Part shown: one piece after another, positions 1,380 to 57,300 of the stretch | Layout of the letters: every line of letters begins with the position of its first letter | Position numbering within the stretch: the stretch's first letter is position 1 | Source: Thalia democratica | Taxonomy: Eukaryota | Assembly (NCBI GenBank): GCA_965202585.1 | Contig: OZ241832.1 | Coordinates: 65,100,001 to 65,164,000 of the forward strand | Reading direction: 5' to 3' | DNA: 64,000 nucleotides | The notes under the pieces: generated by a model | What the model saw: the letters and a program-made list of their open reading frames with translations, nothing else | The model's database searches: none | What the model was told of the DNA's origin: nothing | Position numbers and translations under genes: made by a program

Positions 1380-1597
1380 AAAAAATTCAAACCAGAATTT
1401 TCTAGAAGAACTTTATAAAAACACCAGTTTGTATATCGAGAATTAATTTTTTTGGCAGCATTAAGGTTCAGAGGTTAAAATTCTTTCAATTACTCTTTAA
1501 AATGAAATAAGTTAGTCTGCCATAGATTGAAGGAATCAAAGTCCACTTACCACACACATGGATATTAATGTTTTGGATCACAGTCATTGTAAGTCAA
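1380..1597. repeat. Unassigned ~200-bp dispersed module (also ~6760-6925, ~17750-17950, ~32391-32600)
   Basis: Shared string gagaattattttt..gcattaaggtt.agaggttaaaa...gtctgccatag.ttgaagg.atcaaa.tccacttaccac...attgtaagtc occurs in four places. Confidence 0.8.
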
Positions 1598-3129
1598 AAT
1601 ATGTATGAAACTTATTGCTGTTATAAAAATTAAAGTTTTTGTTCATCAATAAAAGTTCAAAATGTTTAGAATTGTTTTCTAATTTGAAATTAAATTGTTA
1701 TCATAATGATCTTCAAAGACTTTTTTCCAGAAATATTTAAACACATTTAAAATCTGTGATAAAGTATTTTTATGTTTTTAATAATTTTACTAAAAAATGT
1801 CTAAAAAAGTTTAACACAGTAGAAATTAAAATAACTGAAATTAAATTCTATTTCTGGTAAAATATTATTGAGGTCATGATTAAAAAGTAAGAAATATAAT
1901 ATATTAAGCAACTGAAACCCATTTTGACAGAATTAAATATTAATTGTTTTACTATTTTCAAGCACATATGACTGGTGTCTTTAAATAGTTAAACTTCATA
2001 AGGTTTTACTCAAATTTACAATTTATAAGTAAAGTTGAAATGTCATATTTGAAATGTTATATTTTCCACTCATCTAATATATTTTATTGCAAATAACAGT
2101 AAAACAAAAATTTAGTTAGTAATACTGGTTATAGTTTTAGCTTTTTTGTAAACTTATGCAATTATCAAAATCATATGTATTATGTGTTACAATCATATTT
2201 CAAGAATTTTTTTTGATGAATTTGAAATATATAAATATTATTGTGTAACAAAATTCAAAAATTTAAACACAATACGACAAAGTCAAACAAAATGAAGGTC
2301 CAATTATAAACTGGGTATCCATGTCAAATTCCAATTTGTTGTCAAAGCTACAAATTTAATTGTTGATATTACTATTAATATTATACTTTGATTATTATGC
2401 ATTGTCATTGAGGTGGATTGAGCTCTTCAACGTCATAGATCTTACCTACTGCAGGTGGATTGGAGTCTTTTTCAACAATTTTGAAGAATTCAATATACAT
2501 CTTTGGGCCATTGCCTGCCCTTTTTCATTTTATACATCTTAAAGCATTAAAAATGCAGATTTTAAAGTTAGCATTTATATGCTAATGTACCTAAGAGCTA
2601 CTTCTAAAAAATATTCTGTTATTCATTTCATAAATAAACATAATTTTGAATGTGAGCTATTTAAATTAATTACTAGGAAGACAATTATAATTTTTAATGC
2701 TAAGCAAAGTAGCTCATGTGGTCTCACCAACAAAAAGTGAATAAGATCTGAGCTAATTTATTTAAATTAATTGATCTTTATATTTTTGTATGATGAAATT
2801 TTTTACTACTACAGTACATTTTATTCCTGAATTATGGAAATATTTTTGCCTTACACAGTGTTTCAAGCATCTAATAAGACATAACATTGTGAAATTTTAC
2901 TGTGCATGTCAAGATGCAAGACAATTTATACTTTTTTTTTGATGTTGTGTAACTTAAACTGCTGTTACAGAAGTAAAACAATCTCTTATAAACTAATAGC
3001 CAAAATGTTAGTTTGTACAAAATAGACTCTTAAAGTTTATTAAGTGTAATTATTTTCCCACAGTTACATACAAGTTCTTCTGTTTTATCAGAATTGAAGA
3101 ATAACTTGTCAATTTAGTTTAATAGATTA

Positions 3130-3564
3130 TTAACAATGTAAAATCTGAAAAGAAAGTAACTTCAGCCCTGCAGTACCATAAAATTCTTGTCCTATTCTCC
3201 CATAACCCTTAAGCTTGCATACTGTATTCCCCGCCACTATGCTATTCGACGTCAGTATCATAACCTGATGCGGACTCAGCCCCACAACCCCTGCATTTGT
3301 ATGCACACCAGTAACGTGCAGTCTCGCAGAAGCACTGGGAGCCTCCGGGAGAGGAGGGCCCCTGACATTTTGACTGCTCGCTAAAATCGTATCAATCCCA
3401 TTATTTGCTCGAGCAACTACGTAATCGTGGGTTTCAACGAACCAGCTGATATAATCCTCCCTCGCCTGACCATCCAAATTGCTGATTCCTCTCAGGTTGT
3501 TCTCGAACTGGGTCATATATCTGCCGTTAGTAGAAGCAACTACCTTAGCACTCTCAGCTGCACT
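3130..3564 (-). pseudogene. GC-richer inserted coding fragment of unknown origin (candidate endogenous viral or foreign fragment)
   Basis: 128-aa ORF 3130-3516, open 16 codons further upstream (SAAESAKVVASTNGRY). Hand counts of two 60-nt lines gave 42% and 63% G+C, well above the background. Absent from copy B. Confidence 0.55.
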
Positions 3565-4294
3565 TTACTATAACCATTTTACTTTTCTCAGATTGTTGAT
3601 AAGATTTTACATGAAGAATAACTCCTTGTCAATTTAGTTTAATAATTTATTAACAATGTAAAATCTGAAAAGAAAACAAGTATAAACATAAACACTAAAA
3701 TGAGCTATAGTCTAATTATCCTACAAGAATATTGAATTCTGCAACTAGAATCTTTTTACTTCTGACAAAATAAGTTGTGAAAAAACCAATATATTTTTTT
3801 TGTGAAAATGTTGGTGATCTTCATTATCTTTTAAATTTGTATCATCATGAGGCTTTCTGTGAAACCATTTGGCTTAATAAATTATGTGAATTTTAATCTC
3901 AAGAGTAATTTTCATTTCTAACAAAAATACTGCTTTATCTATCAGTGTTTTTTTTTGGGTAACCTGTTTCTGATAACTTTTAACTTTTATACACCAAATA
4001 CAGTTAATATATATTTCACTTTAATTTGGGTAAAGTTACCCATTTCAATCTAAATTTGTTTCTTTTTATACTTTCTTCAAATGCCAAATATCTATATATA
4101 AGTTTTGTGTTTACTTATAAACAGAAATCTTAGACTTTCAATCAATTTATAGCTTATTTTACTGCAAATAAAAACCTTGTTATCCTTTAGTTTAGATGCA
4201 TTTTACTTATTAAATTTATTGTTTCCAGAGAAACTTTTTCACATTGTATTTAAAGCTGTAGCAGTACACATGAGACTCTAAATTAAAAAAAACC

Positions 4295-4810
4295 TCTTTT
4301 TTATTAAATATTTTAAATCTCCCCACATCCTTTCAACCTTCTGGGTATGAACCCAAATGTTAAGAGGGTGTACAAAACCTACCGCATAATTAACTTTAAA
4401 ATGAAAAATTTATTTAAATTACGCTTATTCTAGAAGTTAAGCTATTTCTTTTTATTTTTCTATTGAAGACAATTAGATTGTTAATATTATTACACAAAGC
4501 TTATATTTAAATATTATTTGAACTAATAGAGTATTAAAACTATACAACCTCAATTTAAGGTTTGGTGCCCTAGGATATAAATATGAATTTAAGGTTGCAA
4601 ATATTCAGCTAACTATAGAAACGTCATTGCTACTAAGTAAATTTTCTATATTGTTATTGGCCACAGCTGTCTGATATAATAGTAGTGCTCAATATATTTA
4701 ATAATTACTGGCTCCAACGTCTCCCTATCTGTCCTTCCCTCCATTCCCATACAATGTATAAAACGTTTACTGCTACAACTCCATACCGCCAAATACCCAG
4801 TGATGGGTCC
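4295..4810 (-). mobile_element. Merlin (IS1595/ISXO2-like DDE) transposase fragments
   Basis: Minus-strand translations WVFGG...DRETLEP...STTIISDSC (4655-4810) and HFKVNYAVGFVHP...HTQKVERMWGDLK (4295-4405) match the Merlin motifs WVFGG / GTTIISD / H.TVNH...HTQ.IER.W. Confidence 0.8.
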
Positions 4811-4829
4811 TTATAAGTGTTTTAAATGG

Positions 4830-5110
4830 TTTACTTTTGCAAGGTGATATTTTTGCTTGGAACATAACTTTTGCATGCAGGTTGATTAAATGCTTCTATG
4901 TAATACCAAATCTAACAAAAATTTTTAAGTTTTGAAAACTGAAAATCGTATAAATTATTATAACTACAAACTACCTTGCAGTGACTTTTAGTACAGCTAT
5001 AGTTTTTTATTCCTTGAAGGATTGGTCCTATTATATGTAAGAAGGTGCCCTTCGAATACTATTTTGTTGTGTTTGCCTACACAAGGTACTTCAGTAGAGT
5101 ATTTACTCTA
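4830..5110 (-). mobile_element. Intron-containing fragment, possible FLYWCH/WRKY-like zinc finger of a transposase (copies at ~14690-14790, 21430-21680, 35310-35595 and in each tandem unit)
   Basis: IVFEGHPLTYNKTNPSGNK..YRCTKSHCK (with a frameshift in an A run), then a ~75-nt GTAGTT...TTTTTGTTAG intron on the minus strand. Confidence 0.4.
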
Positions 5111-5394
5111 TAAAAGGGAAAACACTGAAATTTTTGATATATTAAAATTTTTTGAATGTATCATTAAATAAATATATCTTTCTTTGTTGAGTTTATTTAC
5201 AAACTAATTAAAAGAATGATAAAGTCTGTAATACAAAACATAACTAAAACTAGGTAAATACTTCTACAATCATGTTGTGGTAAAAACTTTGTTGATCCTA
5301 TTTCAATTGGATCCTTGTTCAGTCAAACTTGATTGTTGAAAGCAGGTTTTCATCAGATGTGTGTTTGTGTTGTTTAAAAATACCTTTTTCTTTT

Positions 5395-6700
5395 TAAAGT
5401 GCAGGATGAGAATTGTTTAGAATTTAATATATTATTTTATTTCATTATATTTTGTAAAAGAGCTACACTCTTCCATCAAAAATTTTTATTTTTAAGAATT
5501 TCATTATCAATATTTGCTTTTGAATTACCATTTTTTGTGTGCTACAAAAGATTCTGTTAGAATTTGGAAACACAGAATTAATCGCTTTAGTTATAGAATA
5601 TTCTTAATCACTGACAAAAATTAATTTGTAGATTGCCAATCTTTTAAATAAAAAGTTTCATCTGCTATTTCTTGCAAGGTTTTATCTATGGTTTCAAAAA
5701 AATAAATAAAAACATCAATTTTCAGGATGCTTGAAAAAAAATTAGTCCTATAAAAGAAGCAAGGTCTTTTGAAATTGTTTGATACAGCTTTATATTTGTA
5801 TAACTTAATGTAGTAATATAAAACTATGACCTATCAAAAGTCATATCAACTTGGATAAGACATTTATATTTTGGGTTTGTAATAAGCTTGTATAGGCCAT
5901 AAAAACTATCTTTAATATATAATACGACAGATTACAATTCTTACTTACATTTGTTTAAAATGTTTCTTTTGAACAAAGTCATCATTACCAGCCTTTTTAC
6001 TTAGATTACAGATTTGTTCAACCACATTTCTGTCAACCAAACGGTTTTTTTTTGGTTTTTTCCCTACTCCCTTTGTTACATCTGTACATTCCTCTTTTTA
6101 TGTCATAACTGAATTTAAAAGTATTTGTAAGTTTAATGATATTTATATTTAATAAAAAAATTATTGAGTAGTTTGTAAAACAAGTAATTACTCGCATGGT
6201 TTGCTGCATTTTGGACACAGAGCTCCTTTTGACAAAACTCTGTGTTTTTGAAGAAACTTTCTGGAGAATTCTGGGCGTCAAATAATACTATTCTTATTAA
6301 GGGGTTGTCTATACAAAAACAGTTCATAATAAAATTATACTTTAACTCTATGGCTTCTTACTAATTAGTTTTTATCTTTAAAAGTGTAGAGAAAAGTTAT
6401 TTGTATTGGTACTATGTTACCAAGCAATGTTTTTAATTTTTATAAGTTAATGTAGTAATATAAACTCTTCTTACCTATCGAAAGTCTTATCAACATGGAT
6501 TAGACATTTATAATTTGAATTTGTAACAAGCAAAACAGGTCATATAGACTATTCGTAAAATATAATACAAAATAAGGCAATTCACTTTTACATTTGTTTA
6601 CAATGTATATTTGCACAAAGTCCACATTACCAGCTTTTTACTTTGATCACAAATTTCTTTGACCATATTTCTGCCAACCAAACGGGTTTTTTTAGTTTTT
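5395..6700 (-). mobile_element. Mutator/MULE transposase family 2 catalytic-core fragments
   Basis: ...SVVLY...IQVD(K/M)TFD..FYITTLSY (first Asp) and FVSD[Q/*]EYSITKAINSVFPNSNRIFCST (second Asp plus CxxH region), with stops and frameshifts. A second first-Asp piece lies at ~6420-6700. Confidence 0.8.
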
Positions 6701-7039
6701 TTTGTATGATAATACATATCATGTTTAGTAATAAACTTATCTATAATCAGATATTTCCAGTTTGTTTATTGAGAATTATTTTTTTGGTAGCATTCAAGTT
6801 CACAGGTTAAAACTACATCAATTACTCTCTAAAATTAAATAAGTATGTCTGCCATAGGTTGAAGGTATCAAAATCCACTTACCACATGGGTATTAATATT
6901 TTTGCTGATAGTAATTGTAAGTCATGTTATTATTTCTATTATTTTTCTGTTCGAGATGCACAGTATGGATCTTGAGCAGGTGCATTGTCTTTTATAGTTA
7001 TTTTCATCTTATGTTTTAAATATTCTTCTGTGTAAAATA

Positions 7040-7950
7040 TGTTCGCATAATCTCCTTAGTCTTATTGACTCTCCGAATACAATTGGTTTGTAAATGGAGC
7101 ATGGATGGTGTGACTTTCCATTTACAAATACACAATTTTTGCTGTTGGTTTTATATAGTTTTTTACATAAAAGCTGCCCTTTTCTGTTTAGTCAATGACG
7201 TGGTTGACATCCAAAATATTTCAGTTTAGTATATTGCAACATTTTTTATAAGGTTTTGGAACATGGTGGTAATTCTAGATAAGAAAGTGTTGCCTAAAGC
7301 CCAATTCATTCTTTTTGGTGTTTCTCTTTTTTTTTGTTTCAACTTGTTCTGGGTTTAATTTATGAGTTTTAAATGTTGGGTAGATTTGTCCTGGGTTATC
7401 ATTTTTTAAATATTTAGCTTTTTGGCCTGTTATTTTTGACAGTATTCCACTTATGTTAATTTTTTCCAATTGTGTGAAATAATATGATTTCATCTATTCA
7501 ATAACCTTCATCACTTATAAAAACAGTTGGTTATTTACCTTCTGCTTCACTTTTGTATTTGAAAGTGTTTGTCAGTCAATTAGGTAAAATGTTGTTTACT
7601 ACCACATTTTTTACTTGAACTTTTTAAAATTTGGACAGTTTTCAATCTAATACTCCTGACTTTTTTTTATTTATGACATGTTGTTGTATGGAACTTTATT
7701 TTGGATGTTAATAATTTTCATTACATTCAAATTCAAGTATAGTTTGAATGTGTTCAACAGGATTCTAGTTGATGAATTTATTTTAACCACATATTTTATA
7801 TTTAGAAAATTCCAAATATTTGTAACATCTCTTTTTGACTTGAAGTATTTGTGGTACTTGTGGTAAAATTCAACATTTAAATTTCTTTGTTTTCATTAAC
7901 ATTTGTTTTTCAAATTTATAAATATCACGTTATCAAATTTATAAATATTA
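7040..7950 (-). mobile_element. Penelope-like retroelement family A fragment (RT N-terminus and thumb, internally deleted)
   Basis: NPGQIYPTFKTHK (ORF 7275-7493) and FVNGKSHHP.SIYKPIVFGESIRLRRL, both typical PLE RT motifs. Confidence 0.8.
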
Positions 7951-9230
7951 CTGCTATCATCTGGTGCTTCCATAAAATTCACCAGAAATATGCTTATAAG
8001 TCATATATTTGTAATTCTTTTATAACAACTATTGCTTGAAAGATATAGTCAAACCATACATAATGATTTGTATTGTCTTATATTTAAAGGAAAATGTTTT
8101 GGAAACTCATGCCTTCTAAGTTGAGGAATATTTTAGGAGTTACACTAGTTTGTGAAGGTTTTCAAGAAATGTTGTATATATATAGTTCTTTCATTTCCTA
8201 CCTAAGAGTTGAAGAAATTCTTTAACATGTTCTTTTTAAAAATTTTCTGACATCACAGAGTTTTGTTTCACACTCTAAAAAAATATAATTTAATTCAAAA
8301 TCAATAAAACATTTTTGTTACATAAATCTAATAATACCAAAGTTTTTATTGACAAACTTTTGTTTTTAAGGTAAAGTTGATAAATTTAATTGACTATCAT
8401 GGTAGTTTCTGTTTTTTTATGGTCAACTTTGAAGTAGCAATTAGTAAAATTTCAACTGTTTGTCTTTCACTTTACTATTTTAATATTATAACTTCAAGCA
8501 CAGCTTTTGGTTGGTTGGGTACCATATTCTCAGTTTTTATTTTTATAAACCTTTTGCAACTTATTATTAACAGATTATTGATTTTAGTATATAACTTTTT
8601 AGTACTACATATATTATACAAAAATCTAAGACAGGATTCATTCAAAAACATCTTTTATTGGAGCAAAGAACAAATAAAATATATTTTGGCTAACACTTAT
8701 CAACTACTTTTGTTAGCAACTAATTTTAAGATTAAATATTGAGTAAATAAATAGATAGAGGTTACATTACGAAAAACAAACAATTAACAAATTGGCATAA
8801 TTAAGCAATAATTAATTAGAAATTCACAATTCATAACTACATATTTATAAATATTTAATCAGGAATTTAAGTAAGATAAGCAACAATAACAAAACCAACA
8901 ATAAAATAAGCAACAAATTTAAACAAAAAAGAAATTCATAACATCTTATAAAGATTAGAATTATAAACGTATTGTTGCTTGCACAAATTAGGTTTAAACG
9001 TTTTTATAAATAAAGATTCTAAACCACTTAAGGTGATAATCATTACGAGCTTTACTTATAATTGAAAAATTACTATCACTATAGTTCTTTGCACAATCTG
9101 AATTGTTTAATAAGTGTTCGGCAATCGCCGATGATATTATTCATTTTGTTTGTATTTTATTTCACAAAGTTTTTCAAAACTATACTAGTAAATTAATTTT
9201 CAAGTGGTAAATGTATAATGAATTTGAAAA
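7950..9230. repeat. Unassigned degenerate segment duplicated at ~49310-50560
   Basis: Collinear similarity by eye. Broken minus-strand frames plus an A-rich (UTR-like on minus) stretch at 8750-9000. Confidence 0.75.
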
Positions 9231-9479
9231 AAAAAAACATAACCAGGTAGTGTAAAGGTTGCCTTTATGTTTACAATAGATTTTTTGATATTTTCAAATT
9301 GACAAAACAGTAACTGTCTTAGTTTTAGGTCTTGCAGTTTCCTTTACAGCTGACTTAATTCAAAAGTTAGTGTTTTCTACTAAATTAATTAAAACAGGCT
9401 TGTTTAGCTTTAAATAAATGTATGGTTGTAAAACATATCTGAAAATTAAGTCCAAACTTTCATTATTATACCTTTTTTC

Positions 9480-10760
9480 TTTTTAAATTGCAGGATGAGA
9501 ATTGTTTAGAATTTAATATATTATTTTCAATTTCATTATATTTTGTAAAAGAGCTACACTCTTCAATCAAAAATTTTGATTTTTAAGAATTTCATTATCA
9601 ATATTTGCTTTTGAATTACCATTTTTTTTGTGTGCTACAAAAGATTCTGTTAGAATTTGAAAACACAGAATTAATCACTTTTGTTATAGAATATTCTTGA
9701 TCACTGACAAAAATTAATTTGGAGATTGCCAATCTTTTAAATAAAAAGTTTCATCTGCTATTTCTTGCAAGGTTTTATCTATGGTTTAAAAAAAAATTAT
9801 TACTTCAAATTTTAGGATGCTTGAAAAAAAATTGGTCCTATAAAAGAAGCAAGGTCTTTTGAAATTGTGCGATACAGCTTTATATTTGTATAACTTTATG
9901 TAGTAATATAAAACTCTGACGTATCAAAAGTCTTATCAACTTGGGTAAAACATTTATAATTTGGGTTTGTAATAAGCTTGTATAGGCCATAAAAACTATC
10001 TTTAATATATAATACGACAGATTACAATTCTTATTTACATTTGTTTAAAATGTTTCTTTTGAACAAAGTCATCATTACCAGCCTTTTTACTTAAATTACA
10101 GATTTCTTCAACCACATTTCTGTCAACCAAACGGTTTTTTTGTTTTTTTTTCTACTCTCTTGTTACATCTGTACATTCCTCTTTTTATGTCATAACTGAA
10201 TTTAAAAGTATTTGTAAGTTTAATACTATTAATATTTAATAAGAAATTTATTGAATAGTTTGTTAAAAAGTAATTACTCGCATGGTTTGCTGCATTTTGG
10301 ACACAAAGCTACTTATGGCAAAACTCTTTGTTTTTGAAGAAACTTTCTAGAGAATTTATTGTCTTCTCTTTGGGCGTCAAATAATACTATTCTTATAAAG
10401 GGGTTGTCTATACAAAAACAGTTCATAATAAAATTATTCATTAACTCTATAGCTTCTTACTAATTAATGTTTATCTTTATAAGTTTAGAGAAGTTGTTTG
10501 TTTTGGTACTATGTTACCAAGCGATGTTTTTAATTTTTGTAAGTTAATGTAGTAATATAAACTCTGACCTATTAAGAGTCTTGTTGACATGGATAAGGCA
10601 TTTATAATTTGAATTTGTAACAAGCCAAACAGGTCATATATACTATCCTTAAAATATAATACAGACAAAGGCAATTCACTTTTACATTTATTTAAAATTG
10701 GACTCATGTCATCATTACCAGCTTTTTGCTTAGATCACAGATTTTTTCAACCACGATTCT
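9480..10760 (-). mobile_element. MULE family 2 transposase fragments (second copy)
   Basis: Paralog of 5395-6700. Contains SDQEYSITKVINSVF.NSNRIFCSTQ and VDKTFD motifs. Confidence 0.8.
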
Positions 10761-10779
10761 GTCAACTTAACGGTCTGAC

Positions 10780-12050
10780 AAAAACTCATTTTTAGGTTTG
10801 TTTTCTCACATTTCTATTAAAGGCAGAACCCATTGCAGCAATAATTTTATGGGCTTAGAACTTATAGTTGGTTAATAGTGTTGCAATTGTTTGTGGAAAT
10901 TAATATGCCACTAAAATATTTGGGTTCTCTTTTGTTCTTTGTGAGTTTTAAAAGTTTTGAAAAGTTTGTTGTCCAAAGACTTATATTCTCATTAACTTTT
11001 CTTGCCTTCTTCATTGGAGCTCCAAACCGATCTTTCCATTCTGCTGTGATTTTAACCATATTTTCAACTAAAGCTTAACAAAAGCAAGACTTTAAACATT
11101 TATCTTTTAAAATCTTTATTGCTTCTAGATAATCACTGTCACGTTTGCACAATCTCCTTAGTCTTAATGACTCTCCGAATACAATTGATTTGTAAATGGA
11201 GCGTGGATGGTGTGACTTTCCATTTACAAATACACAATTTTTAGCTTTTGTTTTATATAGTTTTTTACATAAAAGCCGCCTTTTTCTGTTTAGTCAATGA
11301 CGTGGTTGACATCCAAAATATTTCAGTTTTACAGTAGTTTATTGCAACATTTTTTATAAGGTTTTGGAGCATGGTGGTAATTCTAGATAAGAAAGTGTTG
11401 CCTAAAGCCCAAATCATTCTTTTTGGTGTTTCTCTTTTTTTGTTTCAAATTGTTCTGGTTTAATTTATGAGTTTTAAATGTTGGGTAGATTTGTCCTGGG
11501 TTATCATTTTTTAAATATTTAGCTTTTGGACCTGTTATTTTTGACAGTATTCCACTAATGTTAATTTTTTCCAATTTTGTAAAATAATATGTTTTCATCT
11601 ATTCAATAGCCTTCATCACTTATAAAAACAGTTAGTTATTTACCTTTTGCTTCACTTAGCATTTGAAAGTGTTTGTCAGTCAATTAGGTAAAATGTTGTG
11701 TACTACCACATTTTTTACTTGAATTTTTCATAATTTGGACAGTTTTCAAATCTAATACTCCTGACTTTTTTTATTTATGACATGTTGTTGTATGAAACTT
11801 TATTTTGGCTTTTAATAATTTTCATGATAGCCAAATTCAAGCATAGTTTGAATGTGATCAACAGGATTCTAGTTGATAAAATTTATTTTAACCACAGATT
11901 TTATATTTAAAAAATTCCAAATGTTTGCAACAACTCTTTTTGACTTGAAGTATTTGTGATACTTATGGTAAATTTCAACATTTTAATTTCTTTATTTTCA
12001 TTAACATTTGTTTTTCAACGTTATAAATATCACAGTTATCATCTGGTACT
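10780..12050 (-). mobile_element. Penelope-like family A fragment (longest copy)
   Basis: PGQIYPTFKTHK (11383-11598), thumb HP...SIVFGESLRLRRLCKRDSDYLEAIK (11070-11230), and post-RT EWKDRF...WTTNFSKLLKLT (10862-11059). Confidence 0.85.
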
Positions 12051-46630: not shown

Positions 46631-46639
46631 TTTTTCATT

Positions 46640-46900: not shown

Positions 46901-47489
46901 TTTTGTGTGTGGTGGAGTGTTGGATTTTAAATTATTTTTTTGTTTATGTAATGATTTATTTTTGGAGTAAGGTCTTATAGCCCCGGGTTTTAGTTTCAAT
47001 TTTAGTTTAAAAAATTAAAACAATGGCAGTCTATACCTGTATTACAATGTTGGAAACGTTCATTATCTAAAATTATTATTTAATTATGATATTTATAGTT
47101 TTACTAGAATACACCTTTCTACTTCTTACACCTAAAATACTATAATTATTATAATTTATATTATTATTGAAAAAGAAATCTTTTTTAAATTTTCTAAAGC
47201 TGTTTTTATCTAGGTTATAGCTACTAATTTCTTAATCCGGTAGTTTAGAGATTACCTTTGGGTTTACAATATATTTTTTGATATCTTTAAATTGAAAAAG
47301 CAGTAACTATCTTAATTTTTGGACTATAATTTTAGGACTTGCAGGTTCCTTTACAGCTGACTTATTCAAAAATTGGTGTTTTCTGCTACATTGTTTAAAA
47401 ACAGGCTTGTTCAGGTTTAAACAAATATATGGTTGTAAAACAAATCTGAAAATTAAGTCCCAACTTTTGTTAATATGCCTTTTTCTTTT

Positions 47490-48760
47490 TAAAGTGCAGG
47501 ATGAGAATTGTTTAGAATTTAATATATTATTTTATTTCATTATATTTTGTAAAAGAGCTACACTCTTCCATCAAAAATTTTTATTTTTAAGAATTTCATT
47601 ATCAATATTTGCTTTTGAATTACCATTTTTTGTGTGCTACAAAAGATTCTGTTAGAATTTGAAAACACAGAATTAACCGCTTTTGTTATAGAATATTCTT
47701 GTTCACTGACAAAAATTGATTTGGAGATTCCCAATCTTTTAAATAAAAAGTTTCATCTGCTATTTCTTGCAAGATTTTATCTATGGTTTAAAAAAAATAA
47801 ATATAAACATCAAATTTCAGGATGCTTGAAAAAAATTAGTCCTATAAAAGAAGCAAGGTCTTTTGAAATCTGCGATACAGCTTTATATTTGTATGACTTA
47901 ATGTAGTAATATAAAACTCTGACTTATCAAAAGTCTTATCAACTTGGATAAAATATTTATAATTTGGGTTTGTAATAAGCTTGTATAGGCCATAAAAACT
48001 GTCTTTTTTTATATAATACAACAAATTGCAATTGTTATTTACATTTGTTTAAAATGTTACCATTACCAGCCTTTTTACTTAGATTACAGATTTCTTCAAC
48101 CACATTTCTGTCAACCAAACGTTTATTTTTGGTTTTTTCTCTACTCCCTTTGTTACATCTGTACATTCCTCTTTTTATTTTATAACTGAATTTAAAAGTA
48201 TTAGTAAGTTTAATGCTATTTATATTTAATAAGAAATTTATTGAGTAGTTTGTAAAACAAGTAATTACTTGCATGGTTTGCTGCATTTTGGACACAGAGC
48301 TCCTTTTGGCAAAACTCTGTGTTGTTGAAGAAACTTTCTGGAGAATTTATTGTCTTCTGTTTGGGCGTCAAATAATACTATTCTTATTAAGGGCTGTCTA
48401 TACAAAAATAGTTCATAATAAAATTATACATTAACTCTATAGCTTCTTACTAATTAATGTTTATCTTTAAGAGTTTGGAGAAGTTGTTTGTTATGGTACT
48501 ACGTTACCAAGCGATGTTTTTAGTTTTTATAAGTTAATGTAGTAATATTAACTCTGACCTATCAAAAGTCTTATCAACGGGGATAAAACTTTATAATTTT
48601 AGTTTGTAACAAGCAAAACAGGTCATATAGACTATCCTTAAAATATGATACAAACAAAGGCAATTCACTTTTACATTTATTTAAAATGTATCTTTGGACT
48701 AATGTCATCATTACCAGCTTTTTACTTAGATCACATATTTCTTTGACCACATTTCTGTCA
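47490..48760 (-). mobile_element. MULE family 2 transposase fragments
   Basis: Paralog of 9480-10760. Contains FIQVDKTFDKSEFYITTL. Confidence 0.8.
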
Positions 48761-49330
48761 TCTTAACGGTTTGACAAAAACTCATTTTTAGTTTTGTTTT
48801 CTCACATTTCTATTAAAGGCAGGACCAATTGCAGCAATACTTTTATGGGCCTGGATCTTATAGTTGGTTAATAATGTTGCAATTGTTTGTGGACATTTAT
48901 ATGCCACTAAAACATTCGGGTTCTATTTTGTTCTTTGTGAGTTTTAAAAGTTTTGGAAAGTTTGTTGTCCAAAGACTTATATTCTCAGTAAGTTTTCTTG
49001 CCTTCTTCACTGGAGGTCCAAACCGATCTTTCCATTCTGCTATGAATTTAACCATATTGTCAACTAAAGCTTAACAAAAGCAAGACTTATAACATTTATC
49101 TTTTAAAAACTTTATTGCTTCTAGATAATCACTGTCACGTTTGCACAATCTCCTTAGTCTTAATGACTCTCCGAATACAATTGATTTGTAACTGGAGCGT
49201 GGATGGTGTGACTTTCCATTTACAAATACACTTTTTCTTGCTGTTGGTAATTTCAACATTTATAATTTCTTTACTTTCATTAAAATTAGTTTTTCAATGT
49301 TTTAAATATCACGATTATCATCTGTTGCTT
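48760..49330 (-). mobile_element. Penelope-like family A fragment (thumb and post-RT region)
   Basis: ORF 49071-49259: FVNGKSHHPRSSYKSIVFGESLRLRRLCKRDSDYLEAIKFLKDKCYKS. Confidence 0.85.
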
Positions 49331-51079
49331 CCTTAAAATTCACCAGAATTTTAATTATTATAATTCATTTATTTGTAATTCTTTTATAACAAATATTGCT
49401 TGAAAGATATAGTCAAACCATATATAATGATTTGTATTGTCTTATAGTTAAAGGAAAATGTTTTGGAAACTCGTACCTTCTAAGTTAAGGAATATTTTAG
49501 GAGTTACACTAGTTTGTGAAGGTTTTCAAGAAATTTTGTATATATATTGTTCTTTCACTTCCTGCCTAAGAGTTGAAGAAATTTTTTAACATGTTATTTT
49601 TAAACTTTTTAAGACATTACTGAGTTTTGTTTCACACTCTAAAAAAATAAAATTTAATTCAAAATCAGTAAAACATTTTTGTTACATAAATCTAATAATA
49701 CCAAAGTTTTTATTGACAAATTTTTTGTTTTTAAGGTAAAGTTATTAAATTTATTTGCCTATCATGGTAGTTTCTGTTTTTTTTGGTCCACTTTGAAGTA
49801 ACAATTAGTAAAATTTTAACTGTTTGTCTTTCACTTTACTACTTTAATATTATAACTTTCAAGCACAGCTTTTGTTTGGTTGGTACAATATTCTCAATTT
49901 TTATTTTTATAAACCTTTTGCAACTTATTATGAACAGATTATTCATTTTAGTATATAACTTTTTAGTACTACATACATTATACAAAAATCTAAGACAGGA
50001 TTCATTCAAAAACATCTTTTATTAGAGCAAAGAACAAATAAAATCTATTTTGGCTAACACTTATCAACTACTTTTGTTAGCAACTAATAGAGGTTACATT
50101 AGAAAAATCAATCAATTAACGAATTAGCATAGTTGAGCAAAAATTAATTAGAAATTTACAATTCATAACTACATATTTATAAATATTTAATCAGCAATTT
50201 AAGTAAGATAAGCAACAATAACAAAACAGACAATAAAATAAGCAACAAAAAAAAAAGAAAAAGAAATTCATAACAACTTATAAAGATAAGAATTATAAAG
50301 TATTGTTGCTTGCACAAATTAGGTTTAAACGTTTTTATAGATAAAGATTCTGGTGATAATCATTACAAGCTTTACTTATAATTGAAAAATTACTATCACT
50401 ATAGTTCTTTGCACAATCTAAATTGTTTAATAAGTGTTTGGCAATAGCGGATGATATTATTCTTTTTGTTTATATTTTATTTCACAAAGTTTTTCAAAAC
50501 TATACTAGTAAATTAATTTTCAAGTGGTAAATGTTTAATGAATTTGAAAAATAAAAGTTTGGCTAGTAAACAGTTTACAAAAAGAACTTAAATTATGACG
50601 TAAGAATAAATTTATTAAAAAATCTTTCTATAATATTACTTATTTTTTATAAATTATCTTATTTACAATTTTATATGCAATCCAATATACTGTTGTATAC
50701 TTCATAACTGTCACATGTTTTTTTCAAACAACTCTTTCTCTTTTATTTTATTGAATATTTTGTTGTCTTCTTCAACAACTTTTTAGATTTTGTTGTTAAA
50801 GTTGATATTAGAAAAATTACAGCTTGAAATATTTTTTTGATATAAGTTTGATTATATTAGCCATAATCTCCATATTTATTCTTGTGATACAGTCCAGTGT
50901 AATAAGTAATTATGTTTAAAAATATTCAATTCTGTGGTTAATTTAATCTCATCGGGTAAAGAGGGGTAACTCTGAAAGATTTATTCTCCAGCCTACATGT
51001 TTAAACACTTTTTAGAAAAGTGATTTTATTTCTTAAAATGTATAACTTTGACTAAGCAAATTTTAAAAAATAATTAAAC

Positions 51080-51170
51080 TGTTTGTTTGTACCTCAATAA
51101 CCTGTACCCCACAGTTTATGCCGTCAAGTTGTGGATTATGCTTTATGCCTACTACCTTAAACTTCTTAAA
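51080..51170 (-). pseudogene. Possible second Ulp1/C48 protease catalytic-Cys fragment
   Basis: KHNPQLDGINCGVQV resembles Q.DG.NCGV. Confidence 0.4.
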
Positions 51171-51794
51171 ATTTTTGCTTGCTTGACATTCTTAATCTAG
51201 TACTCTGTTGTCTGAATATTAAAATTTAAAAAAATGCTAAACAATAAATTCATTATTTTAAAAATATGAAAAAAGAGTCACAGTTATTAGGTCAGATTGT
51301 CAGTATATGTCACATCTGCTGGTATAAAGGACAATGCACTTAGTTGCCTTATCCAGCAAAACTTAAGCTCAATTAGGTATTTGATCTAGGAATGTGCGTT
51401 CAGTATATACCTGTAGGACTTTTTATGGGCAGAATTAATTGCAGCAGCTTGGAAAAAATATTTATTTTTGATTTTGATGACATCATATTTTTTATTTATC
51501 ATTATTCAAAATGTATGTGAATGAGTACTATTATAAGAAGGTTTTTGAACGTATTTATATACCATTTGCAACTTAAGTTGCAAATGGTATATAAATATGT
51601 GAATGAATTATTAATGAGATCTTTAAAATGTTTATTTCTAATTTGTTCACTAAATGCCTGGAATTGATGATATGAGAAAGAATGGTTATGCTTAATATTC
51701 TGTGCGCACGCTTTGGTTTAATATACATGAATTTTTCATCTTTATTTTTAATAATTTTCAAATTTTTTTGAAAATAAGTACATAAGCAGTTTAA

Positions 51795-52150
51795 AAATCA
51801 AGGATCATTGATGTGCCGGCTCAATGAAAAAGCTTTGCCTCCGAGAATAGTTGATGAAGAGCCATTATTTTATGTTGGTGTAAAAAGAGTAATCAGTACA
51901 CATGTCCCTCAACATTTTTCGTAAAAAAAAATCTTACTATATTGTCTTTAAGGTCCCCTTATAGCCTCTCAATTGTCTGTGTGTGAATCCACGGGTTTCT
52001 AAGACCCAGAAATCCGACTGCATGATTAACCGTTTGGTGGATGTAGATTAATGTTTTCCCATCCACCAAATTTGCTTCAACAATCGAAAATTAGTGTCGC
52101 CACATTTTCAAAGTTATACTTTTAAATTAAAACATTTGTTTTTTGATTTT
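51795..52150 (-). mobile_element. Merlin C-terminal fragment (paralog of 12130-12480)
   Basis: YIHQTVNHAVGFLGLRNPWIHTQTIERL*GDLK. Confidence 0.8.
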
Positions 52151-54619
52151 GATAATCAAACAATAACAATTAATGTTTATTTTTGAGAGCGAACAACGTA
52201 TTTAATAAAAAGTTTATTTTGAAATGTTCTTATATAATAAAAAATACGTACTACATGATCCTCATTTCAGTACGACTTTACAGACTTGGCTTCTTTGTTT
52301 GTTTTGTTTATACAAAAGGCAATCTCAACTTGTTCATCTGCTGGATTGTCTTCTTTAAAAGGATCAATACTATCATCAAACACTTGATGATTTCTCACGT
52401 AGAGAATTTTGTTATCACAAAGGTTTGATCGTGTTAAGAAAAGTAATAAATGACTAAAAATTATTACTAATAATCTATACTTCTTCGTGCTGCTTCTATA
52501 AGGCTTCCAATTTCCCAAACTTTTCTTCTTTTTGTGAAATCATTTCTAGCTTCTTCTCGATTCGGATGGCATAATTGGTGATTTTTAAGATAGGAAAAAG
52601 GGCTTCTACAGCTTGGTTGTAGAAGCTTCAGTTTTACATTTATATTGTAGGGCGCAATTATTTTGCTTCTAAAACTACTTGTACAGCTGTATGATATTTT
52701 AATTGTGTTGCGGTTAAATATTTTATTATATAAGTGGTTTTCATCAAAGCACTGAAATTATAAAATGATCTCCAAATATGACCTACATAGTTGAGTTTCC
52801 AAATTTATGAGAATGTTTTTTCAGTTGTTTGTAATTCAACAGAATCCCGAAAATGCATTTTGCTGGTTATTGTGCCTGAAAATCTGCAGTAAGCTAATAA
52901 TTTTGCTTCACCAAATACACCAACAATCTCATATTGTAAACCAAAACAAAATTAAAGTTCAGGCTTAGGTTCTGTTTTGTATTAATAAAGCTTCTTTTAG
53001 GCACAACCTATATGTTATTGTTCCTGGTTTAGATTTTTTTCTTTGTATTATTTTCAAACTCAGTAGTTCTTGTTTTTATTTTTTGATTTGTGTATTAATT
53101 TTGAAAGCGGTTGCTTGTTTGTACTGTAGGTAATTACTTTAACATGATTAAGTATCTGTTACTGATCTTTCTTATAATTTCAACAGTACTCCCAGAGCAT
53201 CAAAACTTTATAAAATTTCTGATTTCATAAAAACAATCAAAATTTTTCACTGACTCACTTTTCTGACAAACTATGTTTAAGGAAGAATATTTTCAACAAG
53301 CTTTATTTTTTTCAATTGATGCTGAAAAAACACATTTTTACATTTCTTTACAAACTCACACTGTACAAACTCTACTATAAATTATCCAAGTATTTTGTTA
53401 AGAATACAGTTGGTGTTGCATATTAGTAATTTTATCACCAAGATGGTTTAATTTTGTTAGTTTAACATCAAATCATACATCTAACTTACTTCAATCATCT
53501 TCATCATTTCCCATAATAATAACATAGCAAAAAGTTAATAACACTTTTTCTTGCTGTTGCATATTTTGAAACGTTTGTTTACAAGCTGTCTAGTAATTTT
53601 ACCAAGATCATTATTTGTGAAAGTTTTTCTAAATTTTTTTTTCAACGTGTAAGGCTCTTGATTTTTCACCATTTATTTATTAAGATTAAAAATCTTGTTT
53701 TTGTTTATATTAACAGTGATCATTTTTGAAATACATGGCTTTAAAGTAGTATACTATTAATAATTTTAACTAAGTACTTTGAGTTACTAGGGTGATATCA
53801 AACTTTGTGGTAATACTTCATTCTTTCAAATGATAAGTCAGGAATAGAAAGCGGTTTGCTAGTTGAAAAGCGGTTATCAGTTTGAGGAAAAAGAGGCATT
53901 GACGACTATGCATTAACACATGGCATCAGGCATGAAGAAGCCACTGCCATGTCAAAATTTTTAGATGTTTTTGTCCAAATTTATCATATCATACTATTGT
54001 TTGGCATGTGAACACTATTTGAAGTCTTTGTGTAAATAGACATCAGACTTTTTAGCTCGTTGCGAGCAAATTCTTTTGAGTTTATTTTTTGATTGGGATT
54101 TAAGTTCCTCACAGCTTTATCTAGGCCACGGTACTTTGTAGTATATAGACAATTAAGGCTTTTTGCTTGGATGTAAGAATATATCCAAATTTCTTCATTA
54201 AGTTTTTAAGCATGATTATAATGCTTTGAACTTTTATTCAATATATTTACTTCCAAAGGTTATAAAGTGGTGACTTTTGCTATACTGACATTAAAAGTTG
54301 ATGCATCCACAAGTAATCCACGGAATTCAAAACTTTTCAATGTCTATAAACTGAATTTCTACAATCTTCATAATCAATCCAAATTTTTTAAAGTGTATGT
54401 TCCTGTGATAGTCTTGATTTTAGCATTTGCGCTTTCTGCTGAAATATTGGTGAGTGGTTTTTTATTTGGGAGTTTGAAATTAAATAGTTTGAAATAAGAA
54501 GGAGTTAATGAAATATTATGAGATGCAACACTGTTCATCCTGGTAACATAGTCCACTGACATGATCCGTAGTAGGTTTTATTTTGGTCCACTTTGAAATA
54601 GCAACTAGTAACTTTTAAA

Positions 54620-54900
54620 ATGTTTGTCTTGGAAGTTCACTACTTTAATATTATTGGAAGGAAAATTGAGGCAACAAAGCTAAAAAAATTCAACTTTACA
54701 ACTATTATCACGTCATTATGTCATTACTTATAGTTATAAAGTTATTTTCCTGGTGGCTGTTTATAACCAGGCAGTTTTTACCAGTGTTGTACTATTTTTA
54801 TTACATTAGCCCAAATTGTAATATCAACAACCTGCTGTGATTCTAACCATCTTGTGTCAAAAAATAGTAAAGGAATTGTTCTTTGAACCAGTTTCATATA
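54620..54900 (-). mobile_element. hAT-like transposase fragment (copy B)
   Basis: Paralog of 19700-19980 with the TRWLESQQV motif. Confidence 0.55.
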
Positions 54901-55059
54901 CATTATATTTTCAAGTTTCACAACTTTTATTTTTATAAATTATCTTATTTTCAATTTCGCATTCAATTCAATACATTGTTGTAGACTTCATATCTGCTCA
55001 AGGTTTTTTTTTATGTAATTACTTGGGGTGGTTTCTCCTAACAACTCTTTTATTTTATT

Positions 55060-55700
55060 GAATATTTTGTTGTCTTCTTCAGCATCTTTTTAGATTTTGT
55101 TGTTAAAGTTGATATTAGAAAAATTACAGCTTGAAATTTTTCTGATATAAGTTTGATTACAATAATCTGCATAGTCACTCTTGTGATACAGTTCAGTTTC
55201 ATAAATAAATTTTCATATAGAGTTTAAGAATTGAATTGTCTTTTTATTTGTACTTTTTGTGAAAAATTAATGTTTGATTTTATTAGATTGTAAAATATGT
55301 TCTTGCTTATATGTAAATAGCATCTAAACTTTAAACTGTCAGGAAATATTTTGTATACTAAGTTTATTAGAGCTTGTTCTCCATCTTTCACAAATGATAG
55401 TTTAGACAAATCAAATTCAGGAAATAACTTTGTGTTTATATTTGTTTTAATGAAGTTGAAAAAATGATCGTAGTCCTCTTCTTAAGCATTTTTATGTAGA
55501 AAACATGGATCTTAAAACACAGGATTAGAATTATTATCTCCCAAGATAACTTTGTTGTTTTTAAAATTCTTAGGAAGTGTGCTCCTAAGTTAGTCCTGCC
55601 TACACTTCAACAGATCTAAGATCTTTTGAACGTGTTATCATGTTCAGAAACTGATCTTCTGTAACAAGGACAAAAGAAGAAACGTTAGTATGTACATTAT
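55060..55700 (-). mobile_element. MULE family 1 fragment (copy B)
   Basis: ORF 55224-55409: FVKDGEQALINLVYKIFPDSLKFRCYLHISKN. Confidence 0.85.
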
Positions 55701-56589
55701 TAAATGCCAGGTTATTAAATTTTACTATTTATTTACTATAACCAAAATTTTAAAACTTATTATTAACAAATGTGATATTTTCAATGTTTCGTTTATTGCA
55801 GTATTGTTCACATTGCATAAATAAAAACTTGAAATTAAAATGATATATATTTGTCGTTCATTTTGCTATATTTGTTGTATTGTGTGTTGCTATACGTTTT
55901 TTAAGCTGATTGACACTTAGTCCAATGTATATTTTTGATGAATTGTCTGTTTTTATTGTTGCCTGGTAAATAACATTTTTTGCCCTACATTCTCCTCCTT
56001 ACAGGGGGCATGTTTGTTTCTTTCTGCAGGTGTTCATTAACCAAAATAGGTATACATAGCTTGTTTTTCTAAAAGCTGTTCAAAAGTTTAGATAACTTTC
56101 CTTTTAACTTTGTTAAAACAGTTATGCAGGTAGTGTTTTTTCTCTAGATGCTCTTCTTTGAAATATTCTAGCTTTTGTAGTGTCAGACATCACAACTTTT
56201 TTGATAAGATTAACTGCTTTACTACCAAAAAAAAAAAACGATCTACAATTGTGATTACGCATTTTTTTCTATGTTATGATAAAAAAGTGTTCTTTTTAAA
56301 TCATACTTTTTACCAAAAATAAGTTAAAAGTCTTACTTACCAGTGTAACATATTTCAACAAAATCAACTGCTTTACTACAAAAAAGTACCCTGAAAAACT
56401 GCAGTAACCACGTTTTATTCTATCTTCAGCTTCTCTAAAAGTTAATTTTTTTACATTAAAATATGTGCTACATCTTTTGAACTAAGAGTTTTTTAAAGTA
56501 ATTTTAAAGAAATAACTTGTTTAAAGAAAATTGTTTTTGTTGTATTTTTTAAAAACCGTCTAAGTAGCCGTATTTTTTCATTATTGTTT

Positions 56590-57030
56590 CATATTCATCT
56601 TTTATCTTTAAAAAGTTTCTTCTTTACTAGATCGTTTGTTTAAGCGTTGATTAGTTATGTAAGGAATTTGCTTTATGATATTTTTAGGATGGCTTGATTG
56701 TTTGTTGACAAACATAATTTTTGCGTTTTGCTTTTTATAAGGTATAAAAGAGATATCATTCAAGTTGAGCTTCACATCTTGGAAGTCAGTTATCACTAGT
56801 GGCAATTCCACAATGACTCGTAACCCTATAGATTTGGAGAAGGCATGATTTTGTATTTTTGGCTTCTTAACTTTAAAGCCAGAAGAGTTATATAATACAG
56901 CTAGACTTTTGCCTCTTTACAATTCAACTCTAATTAAACCAAAGATATATTTTGTTCTATATTTAGCAAAATATGTTTTATTTATTTTTGTTCTATATTT
57001 GAGCAATCTTTTAAACTTATTCTGAAGAGA
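56590..57030 (-). mobile_element. Penelope-like family B RT fragment (copy B)
   Basis: ORF 56608-56811 DFQDVKLNL..ISFIPYKKQNAKIMFVNKQSSHPKNIIKQIP. Paralog of 22130-22545. Confidence 0.85.
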
Positions 57031-57300
57031 CTTGATTGTTTGATCATCTGTAAAGTGTTCAATAGAAGAGGTCCAAACTGAGTTCGAATTACTCCAACAT
57101 GATAAATGTATTTTTCTTACATATTGCAACACTGTTTTGATTTTGCAAATGTTTCTGAAATTTACCTAGCCTTGATCTTTTATAAAATATAGTGGGATTT
57201 TCTTTGCCTGGAAGCTTGATTGACCCTGAGGTATAAAAACCTATATACAACTACTTGTTTCATTTTATTTTCGATAGTTGTTTTTTGGCTGATCGAGTTT

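What the first reader, a model, noticed from the sequence alone, without database searches (positions are those of the whole stretch)
1380..57300. Library of co-oriented transposon fragments: candidate uni-strand piRNA-cluster-like transposon memory locus
Seen: more than 25 fragments from unrelated superfamilies (two Penelope-like families, two or three MULE families, three Merlin variants, hAT-like, Ulp1) all read on the minus strand. Each is about 60-1300 bp, they abut directly, and none has intact termini. Established: random insertion gives mixed orientation, while Drosophila flamenco-type uni-strand piRNA clusters are enriched for antisense TE fragments. Inference: a plus-strand transcript here would be almost entirely antisense to many mobile elements. 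DNA transposons dominate, the pieces are mostly catalytic-domain coding segments, and the whole library is duplicated as a >31 kb unit, a combination that may be a distinct architecture.
Basis: partly seen in the sequence, partly recalled or inferred. Interest (0 to 1): 0.9.

Follow-up and report, generated by a model that had tools for sequence, protein, structure and literature searches.

The report
Duplicated array of co-oriented transposon fragments
This is a stretch of decayed transposon pieces that all point the same way, mostly because a handful of founder pieces were copied side by side many times; whether it also feeds a small-RNA defence cannot be decided from sequence.

Summary
The core observation holds. 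Every transposon-coding remnant I could detect lies on the minus strand: 14 MULE, 11 Penelope-like and 1 Ulp1 fragment, with none on plus. The window does hold two colinear copies, A (1-26.5 kb) and B (31.0-62.6 kb).

The fragments are not about 25 independent insertions. 46 kb of the 64 kb is repeated inside the window. In the two fragment arrays every repeat is direct: a 1167-bp unit x6, a composite ~4-kb unit x5, and the A/B pair. The computed fragments collapse to 9 sequence classes, or 5-8 possible founders. The chance of uniform orientation is therefore 0.06-0.008, not 2^-25.

Only 16% of the region is demonstrably transposon-coding. The Merlin and hAT calls could not be confirmed with any tool.

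Best reading: an old transposon graveyard enlarged by repeated direct local duplication and deletion, so that orientation is largely inherited.

A uni-strand piRNA source is not excluded (about 0.25), because the founders still all share one strand. No feature that defines such a cluster could be tested here. If it is one, it would be a new member of a known kind. Interest is low to moderate.

The parts
1..26503 (.). Copy A of the large colinear duplication. Its left end is cut by the window edge.
   Evidence: Self-BLAST colinear blocks against 31014-62560 at 98% to 72% identity.
31014..62600 (.). Copy B of the large colinear duplication.
   Evidence: Block pairs: 1-3155/31014-34157 at 98.1%; 3612-5113/34094-35599 at 97.9%; 19338-21377/54280-56275 at 90.4%; 24387-25991/60946-62560 at 83.3%.
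26504..31013 (.). AT-rich spacer (20-23% GC) with no repeat elsewhere in the window, no strand skew and no coding signal.
35470..42472 (-). Tandem array of six 1167-bp units at about 99% identity. Copy A has only about 410 bp of the unit (4984-5394). Each unit carries an 86-95 aa minus ORF of unknown family.
   Evidence: Self-BLAST offsets of 1166-1167 bp; ORFs; no Pfam hit.
5370..9236 (-). Composite repeat R, copy A1: a MULE-R core, a partial repeat of that core, and a Penelope-like thumb piece.
9240..12115 (-). Composite repeat R, copy A2, head-to-tail with A1. The junction at 9236/9240 cuts MULE-R inside its ORF.
   Evidence: the MULE ends at L003 position 1866.
17098..19226 (-). Composite repeat R, partial copy A3.
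45191..45817 (-). MULE-R copy B1. It holds the longest open piece, 115 aa at 45464-45808.
   Evidence: Representative search, best E 3.2e-20. The long hits carry Pfam MULE / Transposase_mut.
46888..50556 (-). Composite repeat R, copy B2, with the most complete MULE-R (46888-48048).
   Evidence: 80% nucleotide identity to L003 1046-2191.
19338..20722 (-). Second MULE family (F3), copy A, 5'-truncated.
   Evidence: tblastn and HMM hits; about 30% aa identity to MULE-R.
54280..55728 (-). MULE F3, copy B.
   Evidence: Pfam MULE E=1.3e-3 for 55227-55481; HMM E=7e-12.
21971..22757 (-). Penelope-like family a (RT C-terminal part to linker), copy A. It breaks inside the ORF, with the same 5-bp deletion and the same break point as contig L003.
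   Evidence: 80% nucleotide identity to Tara contig L001.
56564..57131 (-). Penelope-like family a, copy B.
   Evidence: 86.5% nucleotide and 80% aa identity to L001.
20851..21132 (-). GIY-YIG endonuclease piece of a divergent Penelope-like family (b). The copy B counterpart is 55861-56004.
   Evidence: Pfam GIY-YIG E=7.1e-5, 23.5 bits against a cut-off of 22.6; 31-37% aa identity to L001.
13684..13854 (-). Penelope-like linker piece. The copy B counterpart is 52470-52757.
   Evidence: tblastn E=1.2e-4; jackhmmer.
16639..16854 (-). Penelope-like endonuclease C-terminal piece, present in copy A only.
   Evidence: jackhmmer from L001 ORF3, positions 166-228.
15175..15678 (-). Ulp1/SENP-type cysteine protease domain, frame-shifted, present in copy A only.
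   Evidence: Pfam Peptidase_C48 E=6.6e-4, 20.0 bits against a cut-off of 20.7. All 11 best PDB hits are SENP1/2, with E from 0.034.
4219..4895 (-). Merlin-like piece 'a', UNVERIFIED. The copy B counterpart is 34701-35379.
   Evidence: Rests only on motif reading from memory. About 50% aa identity to piece 'b'. No database support.
12291..12624 (-). Merlin-like piece 'b', UNVERIFIED. The copy B counterpart is 51962-52090.
   Evidence: Same as for piece 'a'.
3156..3611 (-). GC-rich insert (46% GC) present in copy A only, with an unbroken 144-aa frame, flanked by a direct duplication of about 60 bp.
   Evidence: No relative found.

Best explanation
The locus is an old, decaying transposon graveyard in an AT-rich eukaryote, whose relatives turn up in marine plankton metagenomes. 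It grew mainly by repeated direct local duplication and deletion, not by many separate insertions. A few founder elements landed here and were truncated: two MULE families, two Penelope-like families, a Ulp1 domain, and probably two Merlin-like elements. Unequal exchange or replication slippage then copied composite blocks head-to-tail at several scales. These are the 1167-bp unit (x6, about 1% diverged), the ~4-kb composite R (x5, about 5-13% diverged) and the 31-37 kb A/B pair (2-28% diverged). Deletions trimmed the copies. Because such events keep orientation, two dozen fragments now share one strand, and they abut at arbitrary internal break points without termini. SHOWN: the duplications, their direct orientation, the shared break points and the family identities of MULE, Penelope-like and Ulp1. 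INFERRED: the molecular mechanism of duplication, and that the locus has no selected function.
For: 46,077 of 64,000 bases have another copy in the window. Self-similarity gives 120 direct against 11 inverted HSPs, and none of the inverted ones lies inside the two fragment arrays. Duplicated blocks span junctions between unrelated families: R combines a MULE piece and a Penelope-like piece, and the A/B copies are colinear across all families. All eight MULE-R pieces start at the same internal position (L003 about 1058) but end at different points (1201, 1614, 1664, 1866, 2191). This indicates one truncated founder that was copied and then trimmed. The A1/A2 tandem junction at 9236/9240 cuts the MULE ORF. 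The MULE-R copies are nearly equidistant at 92-95% identity. The 24 fragments tested collapse to 9 nucleotide classes. The pieces of Penelope-like family b are non-overlapping parts of one protein, scrambled in order but not in orientation, as expected from tandem copies followed by deletions. The six-unit array at 99% identity shows that the process is recent. Penelope-like elements are known to form 5'-truncated partial tandems (PMC8557442).
Against: After collapsing duplicates, 5-8 founder classes from at least four unrelated families still all lie on minus, with a chance of 0.06-0.008. Duplication alone does not explain this unless older duplications have decayed past detection. About eight short non-colinear patches of 110-260 bp are also all direct. 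The A/B identity is very uneven, so the history is not simple. Lack of function cannot be shown from sequence.
Confidence: 0.55

Rival explanations
1. A uni-strand piRNA cluster. A promoter to the left of each array drives a long plus-strand transcript that is antisense to the MULE, Penelope-like and other elements and is processed into piRNAs. Selection keeps insertions antisense, and duplication enlarges the repertoire.
For: All detectable coding remnants are on one strand, and 5-8 founder classes still share that strand. The region is made largely of dead fragments from several families. Each array is preceded by a duplicated AT-rich block, 1-1380 and 31014-32400 at 98% identity, that could hold a promoter. 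Duplicated uni-strand clusters exist (PMC10495008). TE co-orientation is used to find such clusters de novo (PMC10643416).
Against: No expression, promoter or small-RNA evidence is available. Most of the co-orientation is inherited through duplication. Uniformity is 100%, whereas flamenco is 79% antisense (PMC10495008). The fragments are old: stops about every 30-50 codons, 5-17% divergence between copies, and only 80-86% nucleotide identity to the most intact relatives found. Long perfect matches to active copies may therefore be rare. AATAAA on the plus strand is not depleted beyond what composition predicts. Only 16% of the region is recognisable TE coding sequence.
Confidence: 0.25
2. The arrays lie inside a long plus-strand host transcription unit, for example a large intron. 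Selection there removes sense-oriented insertions that bring splice or polyadenylation signals, leaving antisense ones. No defence function is involved.
For: The orientation is uniform relative to one strand, and strand skew is confined to the arrays. Antisense bias of intronic elements is a general observation, which I cite from established knowledge and did not test here.
Against: No plus-strand exon-like ORF with a Pfam match lies anywhere in the window. The skew is explained by the purine-rich sense strands of the elements themselves. The bias reported for intronic DNA transposons is modest, not total.
Confidence: 0.08
3. The mosaic, or parts of it, is itself a mobile or copied composite. 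It could be fragments captured by a MULE or a Helitron-like element, or joined by reverse-transcriptase template switching between transposon mRNAs. Either route gives same-sense pieces without termini.
For: An unrelated contig (L003) carries the same broken Penelope-like fragment, with the same 5-bp deletion and the same break point. It lies about 650 bp upstream of a more complete MULE-R in the same orientation, and the flanks differ from those in the window. The pieces are mostly coding segments. Penelope-like elements can retrotranspose other sequences in trans (PMC8557442).
Against: The two pieces are arranged differently in the window and in L003. No terminal repeats, no poly(A)-like 3' end and no ribozyme were found. 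The order of pieces does not fit a single cDNA. The other locus rests on one short contig.
Confidence: 0.08
4. An assembly artefact: collapsed or expanded repeats, or haplotypes placed in tandem.
For: The 99% tandem array and the 98% block are of the kind that assemblers mishandle.
Against: Most A/B blocks differ by 10-28% and by many copy-specific insertions, far beyond allelic difference. The window holds no N runs.
Confidence: 0.04

Closest known systems
flamenco-type uni-strand piRNA clusters (Drosophila; flam-like loci across the genus)
   Same: A region tens of kb long, made of dead transposon fragments that lie predominantly in one orientation. Local and whole-locus duplications are known there too (PMC10495008, PMC10643416).
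   Different: Flamenco is dominated by Gypsy/Ty3 LTR elements, includes full-length and nested insertions, and is about 79% antisense rather than 100%. It is defined by a promoter, a long precursor and piRNAs, none of which could be examined here. In this locus the recognisable pieces are MULE, Penelope-like and Ulp1, and most are copies of one another.
Partial-tandem, 5'-truncated insertions of Penelope-like elements
   Same: Head-to-tail, same-orientation arrays of truncated Penelope-like pieces (PMC8557442).
   Different: The repeated units here are composites that also contain MULE sequence. No pLTR or hammerhead ribozyme is detectable. The break points lie inside ORFs.
Segmental and tandem duplication of transposon-rich DNA (transposon-derived higher-order repeats)
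   Same: Direct repeats at nested scales (1.17 kb, about 4 kb, 31-37 kb), shared internal break points and graded divergence.
   Different: Nothing that I could test. This is the category the locus fits best.
Fragment-capturing transposons (Pack-MULEs, Helitrons)
   Same: Several unrelated coding fragments side by side. One broken fragment recurs at a second locus next to a MULE.
   Different: No MULE terminal inverted repeats or Helitron ends were identified. The captured material would be other transposons rather than host genes.

Membership tests
Uni-strand piRNA cluster | Region enriched in transposon fragments | tested here: met
   MULE, Penelope-like and Ulp1 remnants cover 9.0 kb of 55.9 kb. 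The rest is unclassified repeat.
Uni-strand piRNA cluster | Strand bias of independent insertions, antisense to the cluster transcript | tested here: inconclusive
   All 26 fragments are on minus and none on plus, but they form only 9 nucleotide classes, or 5-8 founders. The chance is 0.06-0.008. The direction of any transcript is unknown.
Uni-strand piRNA cluster | Discrete promoter and a long single-stranded precursor transcript | not testable with these tools
   No RNA data and no eukaryotic promoter model. The organism is unknown.
Uni-strand piRNA cluster | 24-32 nt, 1U-biased, PIWI-bound small RNAs from one strand | not testable with these tools
   No small-RNA data.
Uni-strand piRNA cluster | Fragments similar enough to active elements to guide silencing | tested here: inconclusive
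   The best outside relatives are 80-86% identical in nucleotides. The species' own active copies are not available.
MULE (Mutator-like) transposon | Mutator-type DDE transposase domain | tested here: met
   Relatives of piece 45464-45808 carry Pfam MULE / Transposase_mut. HMM hits go down to E=8e-30. Pfam MULE E=1.3e-3 on 55227-55481.
MULE (Mutator-like) transposon | Long terminal inverted repeats and target-site duplication (an intact element) | tested here: not met
   No inverted repeat lies within 1.4-23 kb or 32-57 kb at E<=1e-5. All copies are 5'-truncated at one shared point.
Penelope-like element | Reverse transcriptase followed by a GIY-YIG endonuclease | tested here: met
   GIY-YIG is above the Pfam cut-off. 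Pieces are colinear with the Tara contig L001, whose ORFs carry the DK(T) and YxDD-type motifs upstream of GIY-YIG. The RT itself gave no Pfam or PDB hit, so the RT call rests on motifs.
Penelope-like element | Pseudo-LTR with a hammerhead ribozyme (intact canonical element) | tested here: not met
   No Rfam match at E<=0.1 on either strand.
Ulp1/SENP (C48) protease domain | C48 catalytic domain | tested here: inconclusive
   Pfam gives 20.0 bits, just under the 20.7 cut-off. All top PDB hits are SENP1/2 but weak, with E from 0.034. His and Gln/Cys motifs are visible in adjoining frames.
Merlin (IS1595-related) transposon | IS1595-type DDE transposase domain | tested here: not met
   No hit in Pfam, NCBIfam, the protein collections, the metagenome scans or plasmid tblastn. 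Only a motif resemblance recalled from memory remains.
hAT transposon | hAT transposase or dimerisation domain | tested here: not met
   No Pfam hAT-family hit among about 70 minus-strand and 60 plus-strand ORF pieces.
Tandem / segmental duplication | Direct repeats whose units span junctions between unrelated sequences and share break points | tested here: met

The most novel reading that the evidence does not exclude
The two arrays are a working uni-strand piRNA source in a non-model, probably marine, AT-rich animal. It would be built chiefly from DNA-transposon (MULE, possibly Merlin) and Penelope-like coding fragments rather than LTR elements, and enlarged by tandem and segmental duplication instead of by trapping new insertions.
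Probability: 0.2. Interest if true: 0.5.

Novelty: already known. Interest (0 to 1): 0.22.

Why it matters
The case is mainly a caution. A long run of same-strand transposon fragments looks like strong statistical evidence for a uni-strand piRNA cluster. Here most of the run is produced by direct local duplication, so the fragments must be collapsed to independent events before any orientation test is run. If small-RNA data later show plus-strand piRNAs from this locus, it would illustrate a cluster that grows by duplication and targets DNA transposons and Penelope-like elements. That would widen the known range of such clusters but would not establish a new kind of system.

Tried and rejected
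1. Pfam on about 70 stop-free minus-strand pieces gave only three transposon-domain hits. The pieces are too short and too decayed for single-piece domain search.
2. The word-indexed protein search gave six short Tara fragments for the 154-aa piece. It gave nothing for the MULE piece or the Merlin-like piece.
3. Merlin verification found nothing in Pfam, NCBIfam, two metagenome scans or plasmid tblastn.
4. Pfam and PDB searches for the Penelope-like RT pieces and the L001 ORFs gave no significant hit.
5. Looking up window ORFs as called genes, to identify the organism, found nothing on record.
6. For the GC-rich insert, searches of plasmids, E. coli genomes, viral contigs, prokaryotic genomes, PDB and Pfam were all negative.
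7. AATAAA is not depleted on the plus strand beyond what composition predicts.
8. There are no tRNA genes and no Rfam families.
9. I considered and set aside a single clean 31-kb duplication (identity is too uneven), haplotype mis-assembly (divergence is too high), and R being one transposon (it is a MULE plus Penelope-like composite).

Full report
MATERIAL. The window is 64,000 bases with no N and 26% G+C. It has no tRNA gene and no Rfam match at the gathering score or at E<=0.1. Everything points to repeat-rich eukaryotic DNA. The organism is not known. The nearest outside relatives of its transposons are short contigs from marine metagenomes, several of them Tara Oceans (PRJEB4352), at 80-89% nucleotide identity.

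The fragments are too decayed for domain search on single stop-free pieces. About 70 minus-strand pieces gave only three transposon-domain hits in Pfam:
- Peptidase_C48/Ulp1 at 15175-15429 (E=6.6e-4)
- MULE at 55227-55481 (E=1.3e-3)
- GIY-YIG at 20851-21102 (E=7.1e-5, above the curated cut-off)

I therefore fetched relatives and mapped them back on both strands.
- MULE. A full HMMER search with the 115-aa piece 45464-45808 found 26 relatives (best E 3.2e-20). Seven of the ten longest that I scanned carry Pfam MULE and/or Transposase_mut. tblastn with these gave 158 HSPs in 12 intervals, all on minus. An HMM built from them hit 27 of 2789 stop-free pieces drawn about equally from both strands, and all 27 were on minus.
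- Penelope-like. Tara contigs L001, L002 and L005 are more intact relatives of one Penelope-like family. tblastx gave 66 HSPs, all in minus sense. jackhmmer from the L001 ORFs pulled 15 pieces, all on minus.
- Ulp1. The 11 best PDB matches to the Ulp1 piece are all SENP1/2, though weak.
- Plus strand. None of 60 plus-strand ORFs of 55 aa or more hit any Pfam family at E<=0.01.

Three annotation-free measures agree.
- ORFs of 50 aa or more number 122 on minus against 46+-6 in shuffles. On plus they number 114 against 76+-7.5.
- Of 63 sliding 2-kb windows, 28 reach z>=3 on minus and 3 on plus.
- The excess of T over A on plus is confined to the two arrays and absent from the spacer and tail.

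No inverted repeat of terminal-repeat size lies inside the arrays. So 'same strand, several superfamilies, no intact termini' stands for two MULE families, two Penelope-like families and Ulp1.

WHAT DOES NOT STAND.
- Merlin and hAT could not be confirmed by any tool. The Merlin-like pieces at 4219-4895/34701-35379 and 12291-12624/51962-52090 resemble each other at about 50% aa identity. Their family name rests only on motifs I recall from memory.
- Only 9.0 kb of the 55.9-kb region (16%) is demonstrably transposon-coding, or 20% with the unverified Merlin-like pieces.
- The fragments are not independent. This is the most important point.

ANATOMY. 46,077 of the 64,000 bases have another copy within the window. 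Self-similarity gives 120 direct against 11 inverted HSPs. The inverted ones all lie at 23.2-26.5 kb or 60-62.6 kb, outside the arrays. Three nested scales of direct repetition are visible.
1. Six 1167-bp units at about 99% identity occupy 35470-42472. Copy A keeps only about 410 bp of the unit.
2. A composite unit R of about 4 kb is made of a MULE core, a partial repeat of that core and a Penelope-like thumb piece. It occurs at 5370-9236, 9240-12115 and 17098-19226 in copy A, and at 45191-45817 and 46888-50556 in copy B.
3. Copies A (1-26.5 kb) and B (31.0-62.6 kb) are colinear across all families. Identity is 98% over the first 5 kb, about 90% in the middle, and 83% falling to 72% at the tail, with many copy-specific blocks.

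The break points tell the same story.
- All eight MULE-R pieces begin at the same internal position (L003 about 1058). They end at different points (1201, 1614, 1664, 1866, 2191), as expected for one truncated founder that was copied and then trimmed.
- The head-to-tail junction between R copies at 9236/9240 cuts the MULE ORF.
- The MULE-R cores are nearly equidistant at 92-95% identity.
- The pieces of the divergent Penelope-like family are non-overlapping parts of one protein: thumb, linker, GIY-YIG and the endonuclease C-terminus. They are scrambled in order but never in orientation. Tandem copies followed by deletions would leave exactly this pattern.

HOW MANY INDEPENDENT EVENTS? The 24 computed fragments tested collapse to 9 nucleotide-similarity classes.
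- Two of these classes are adjacent parts of one MULE copy.
- Four may come from one Penelope-like element.
- That leaves 5-8 possible founders.
- The chance that n founders share one strand is 2^-(n-1), which is 0.06 to 0.008. This is suggestive, but far from the 2^-25 that the raw count implies.
- If the unverified Merlin-like pieces are counted, the figure falls to about 0.004-0.002.
- About eight short non-colinear patches of 110-260 bp are also all direct. This fits remnants of older tandem copies, but I cannot prove that.

A SECOND LOCUS. Contig L003 (2.5 kb, 25.7% G+C) holds the same broken Penelope-like fragment as window 21958-22090. The two are 89.5% identical, with the same 5-bp deletion and the same loss of homology at the same point. 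In L003 the fragment lies about 650 bp upstream of a more complete MULE-R with a 301-aa ORF, in the same orientation and with otherwise different flanks. Broken pieces are therefore propagated beyond this locus. This keeps a 'composite or captured unit' reading alive at low probability.

INTERPRETATION.
- Best supported (about 0.55): the locus is a transposon graveyard enlarged by repeated direct local duplication and deletion. Orientation, abutting fragments and missing termini are by-products of that process. Penelope-like elements add their own tendency to form truncated partial tandems (PMC8557442).
The founders still share one strand, and a duplicated AT-rich block precedes each array. 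But none of the defining features could be tested: promoter, long precursor, strand-biased 24-32 nt 1U small RNAs (PMC10643416). The fragments are old and only 80-86% identical to the best relatives found. Total uniformity is more typical of duplication than of a trap, since D. melanogaster flamenco is 79% antisense (PMC10495008).
- The 'distinct architecture' argument is weak, because duplication of flamenco is already known in D. simulans (PMC10495008).
- Minor rivals: antisense bias inside a host intron (0.08), a mobile or captured composite or template-switch product (0.08), and assembly error (0.04).

VERDICT. The feature is real but ordinary in kind. The decisive data are small-RNA and stranded long-RNA maps, together with a genome-wide, duplicate-collapsed orientation analysis.

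Noticed in passing
window 3156-3611 (ORF 3133-3564, minus): A 456-bp insert present only in copy A. It has 46% G+C against about 25% around it and one unbroken 144-aa frame, and it is flanked by a direct duplication of about 60 bp (3098-3155 / 3604-3668). No relative was found in Pfam, PDB, plasmids, E. coli genomes, viral contigs or prokaryotic genomes. It looks recent and foreign. It could be a captured gene fragment or an endogenous viral piece, but its origin is unknown.
   Followed up: partly
window 35470-42472: Six 1167-bp tandem units at about 99% identity, each with an 86-95 aa minus-strand ORF of unknown family. Copy A keeps only about 410 bp of the unit (4984-5394). This is a very recent expansion, or a collapse in the other copy.
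   Followed up: partly
window 23200-26500 and 60100-62600: The only inverted repeats of the window, for example 24145-24623 against 26503-26021 at 69%. They lie just past the high-coordinate end of each array and are part of the A/B duplication at 72-83% identity. They could be a foldback-type or terminal-repeat element, or an inverted truncated Penelope-like copy.
   Followed up: no
L003 1-2502 (ENA ERZ27291330): A metagenome contig with the same base composition. It carries the same broken Penelope-like fragment (same 5-bp deletion, same break point) next to a more complete MULE-R with a 301-aa ORF. This shows that such composites exist at other loci or in related organisms.
   Followed up: partly
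window 48000-54000: This is the one stretch where the ORF excess over shuffles is slightly larger on plus than on minus (z up to 4.0). The plus-strand ORFs are hydrophobic and T-rich. They hit nothing in Pfam or in the MULE and Penelope-like profiles, and they lie opposite minus-strand Penelope-like pieces. They are probably antisense ORFs, but that is not proven.
   Followed up: partly
window 46552-46624: A 21-bp unit repeated 3.5 times inside an 89-aa minus-strand ORF (46490-46756), in a block specific to copy B.
   Followed up: no
window 1-5113 versus 31014-35599: This block is 98% identical between copies A and B, while the rest of the duplication is 72-93% identical. That suggests recent gene conversion or a second, younger duplication. 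The similarity starts at window base 1, so copy A continues to the left of the window.
   Followed up: no
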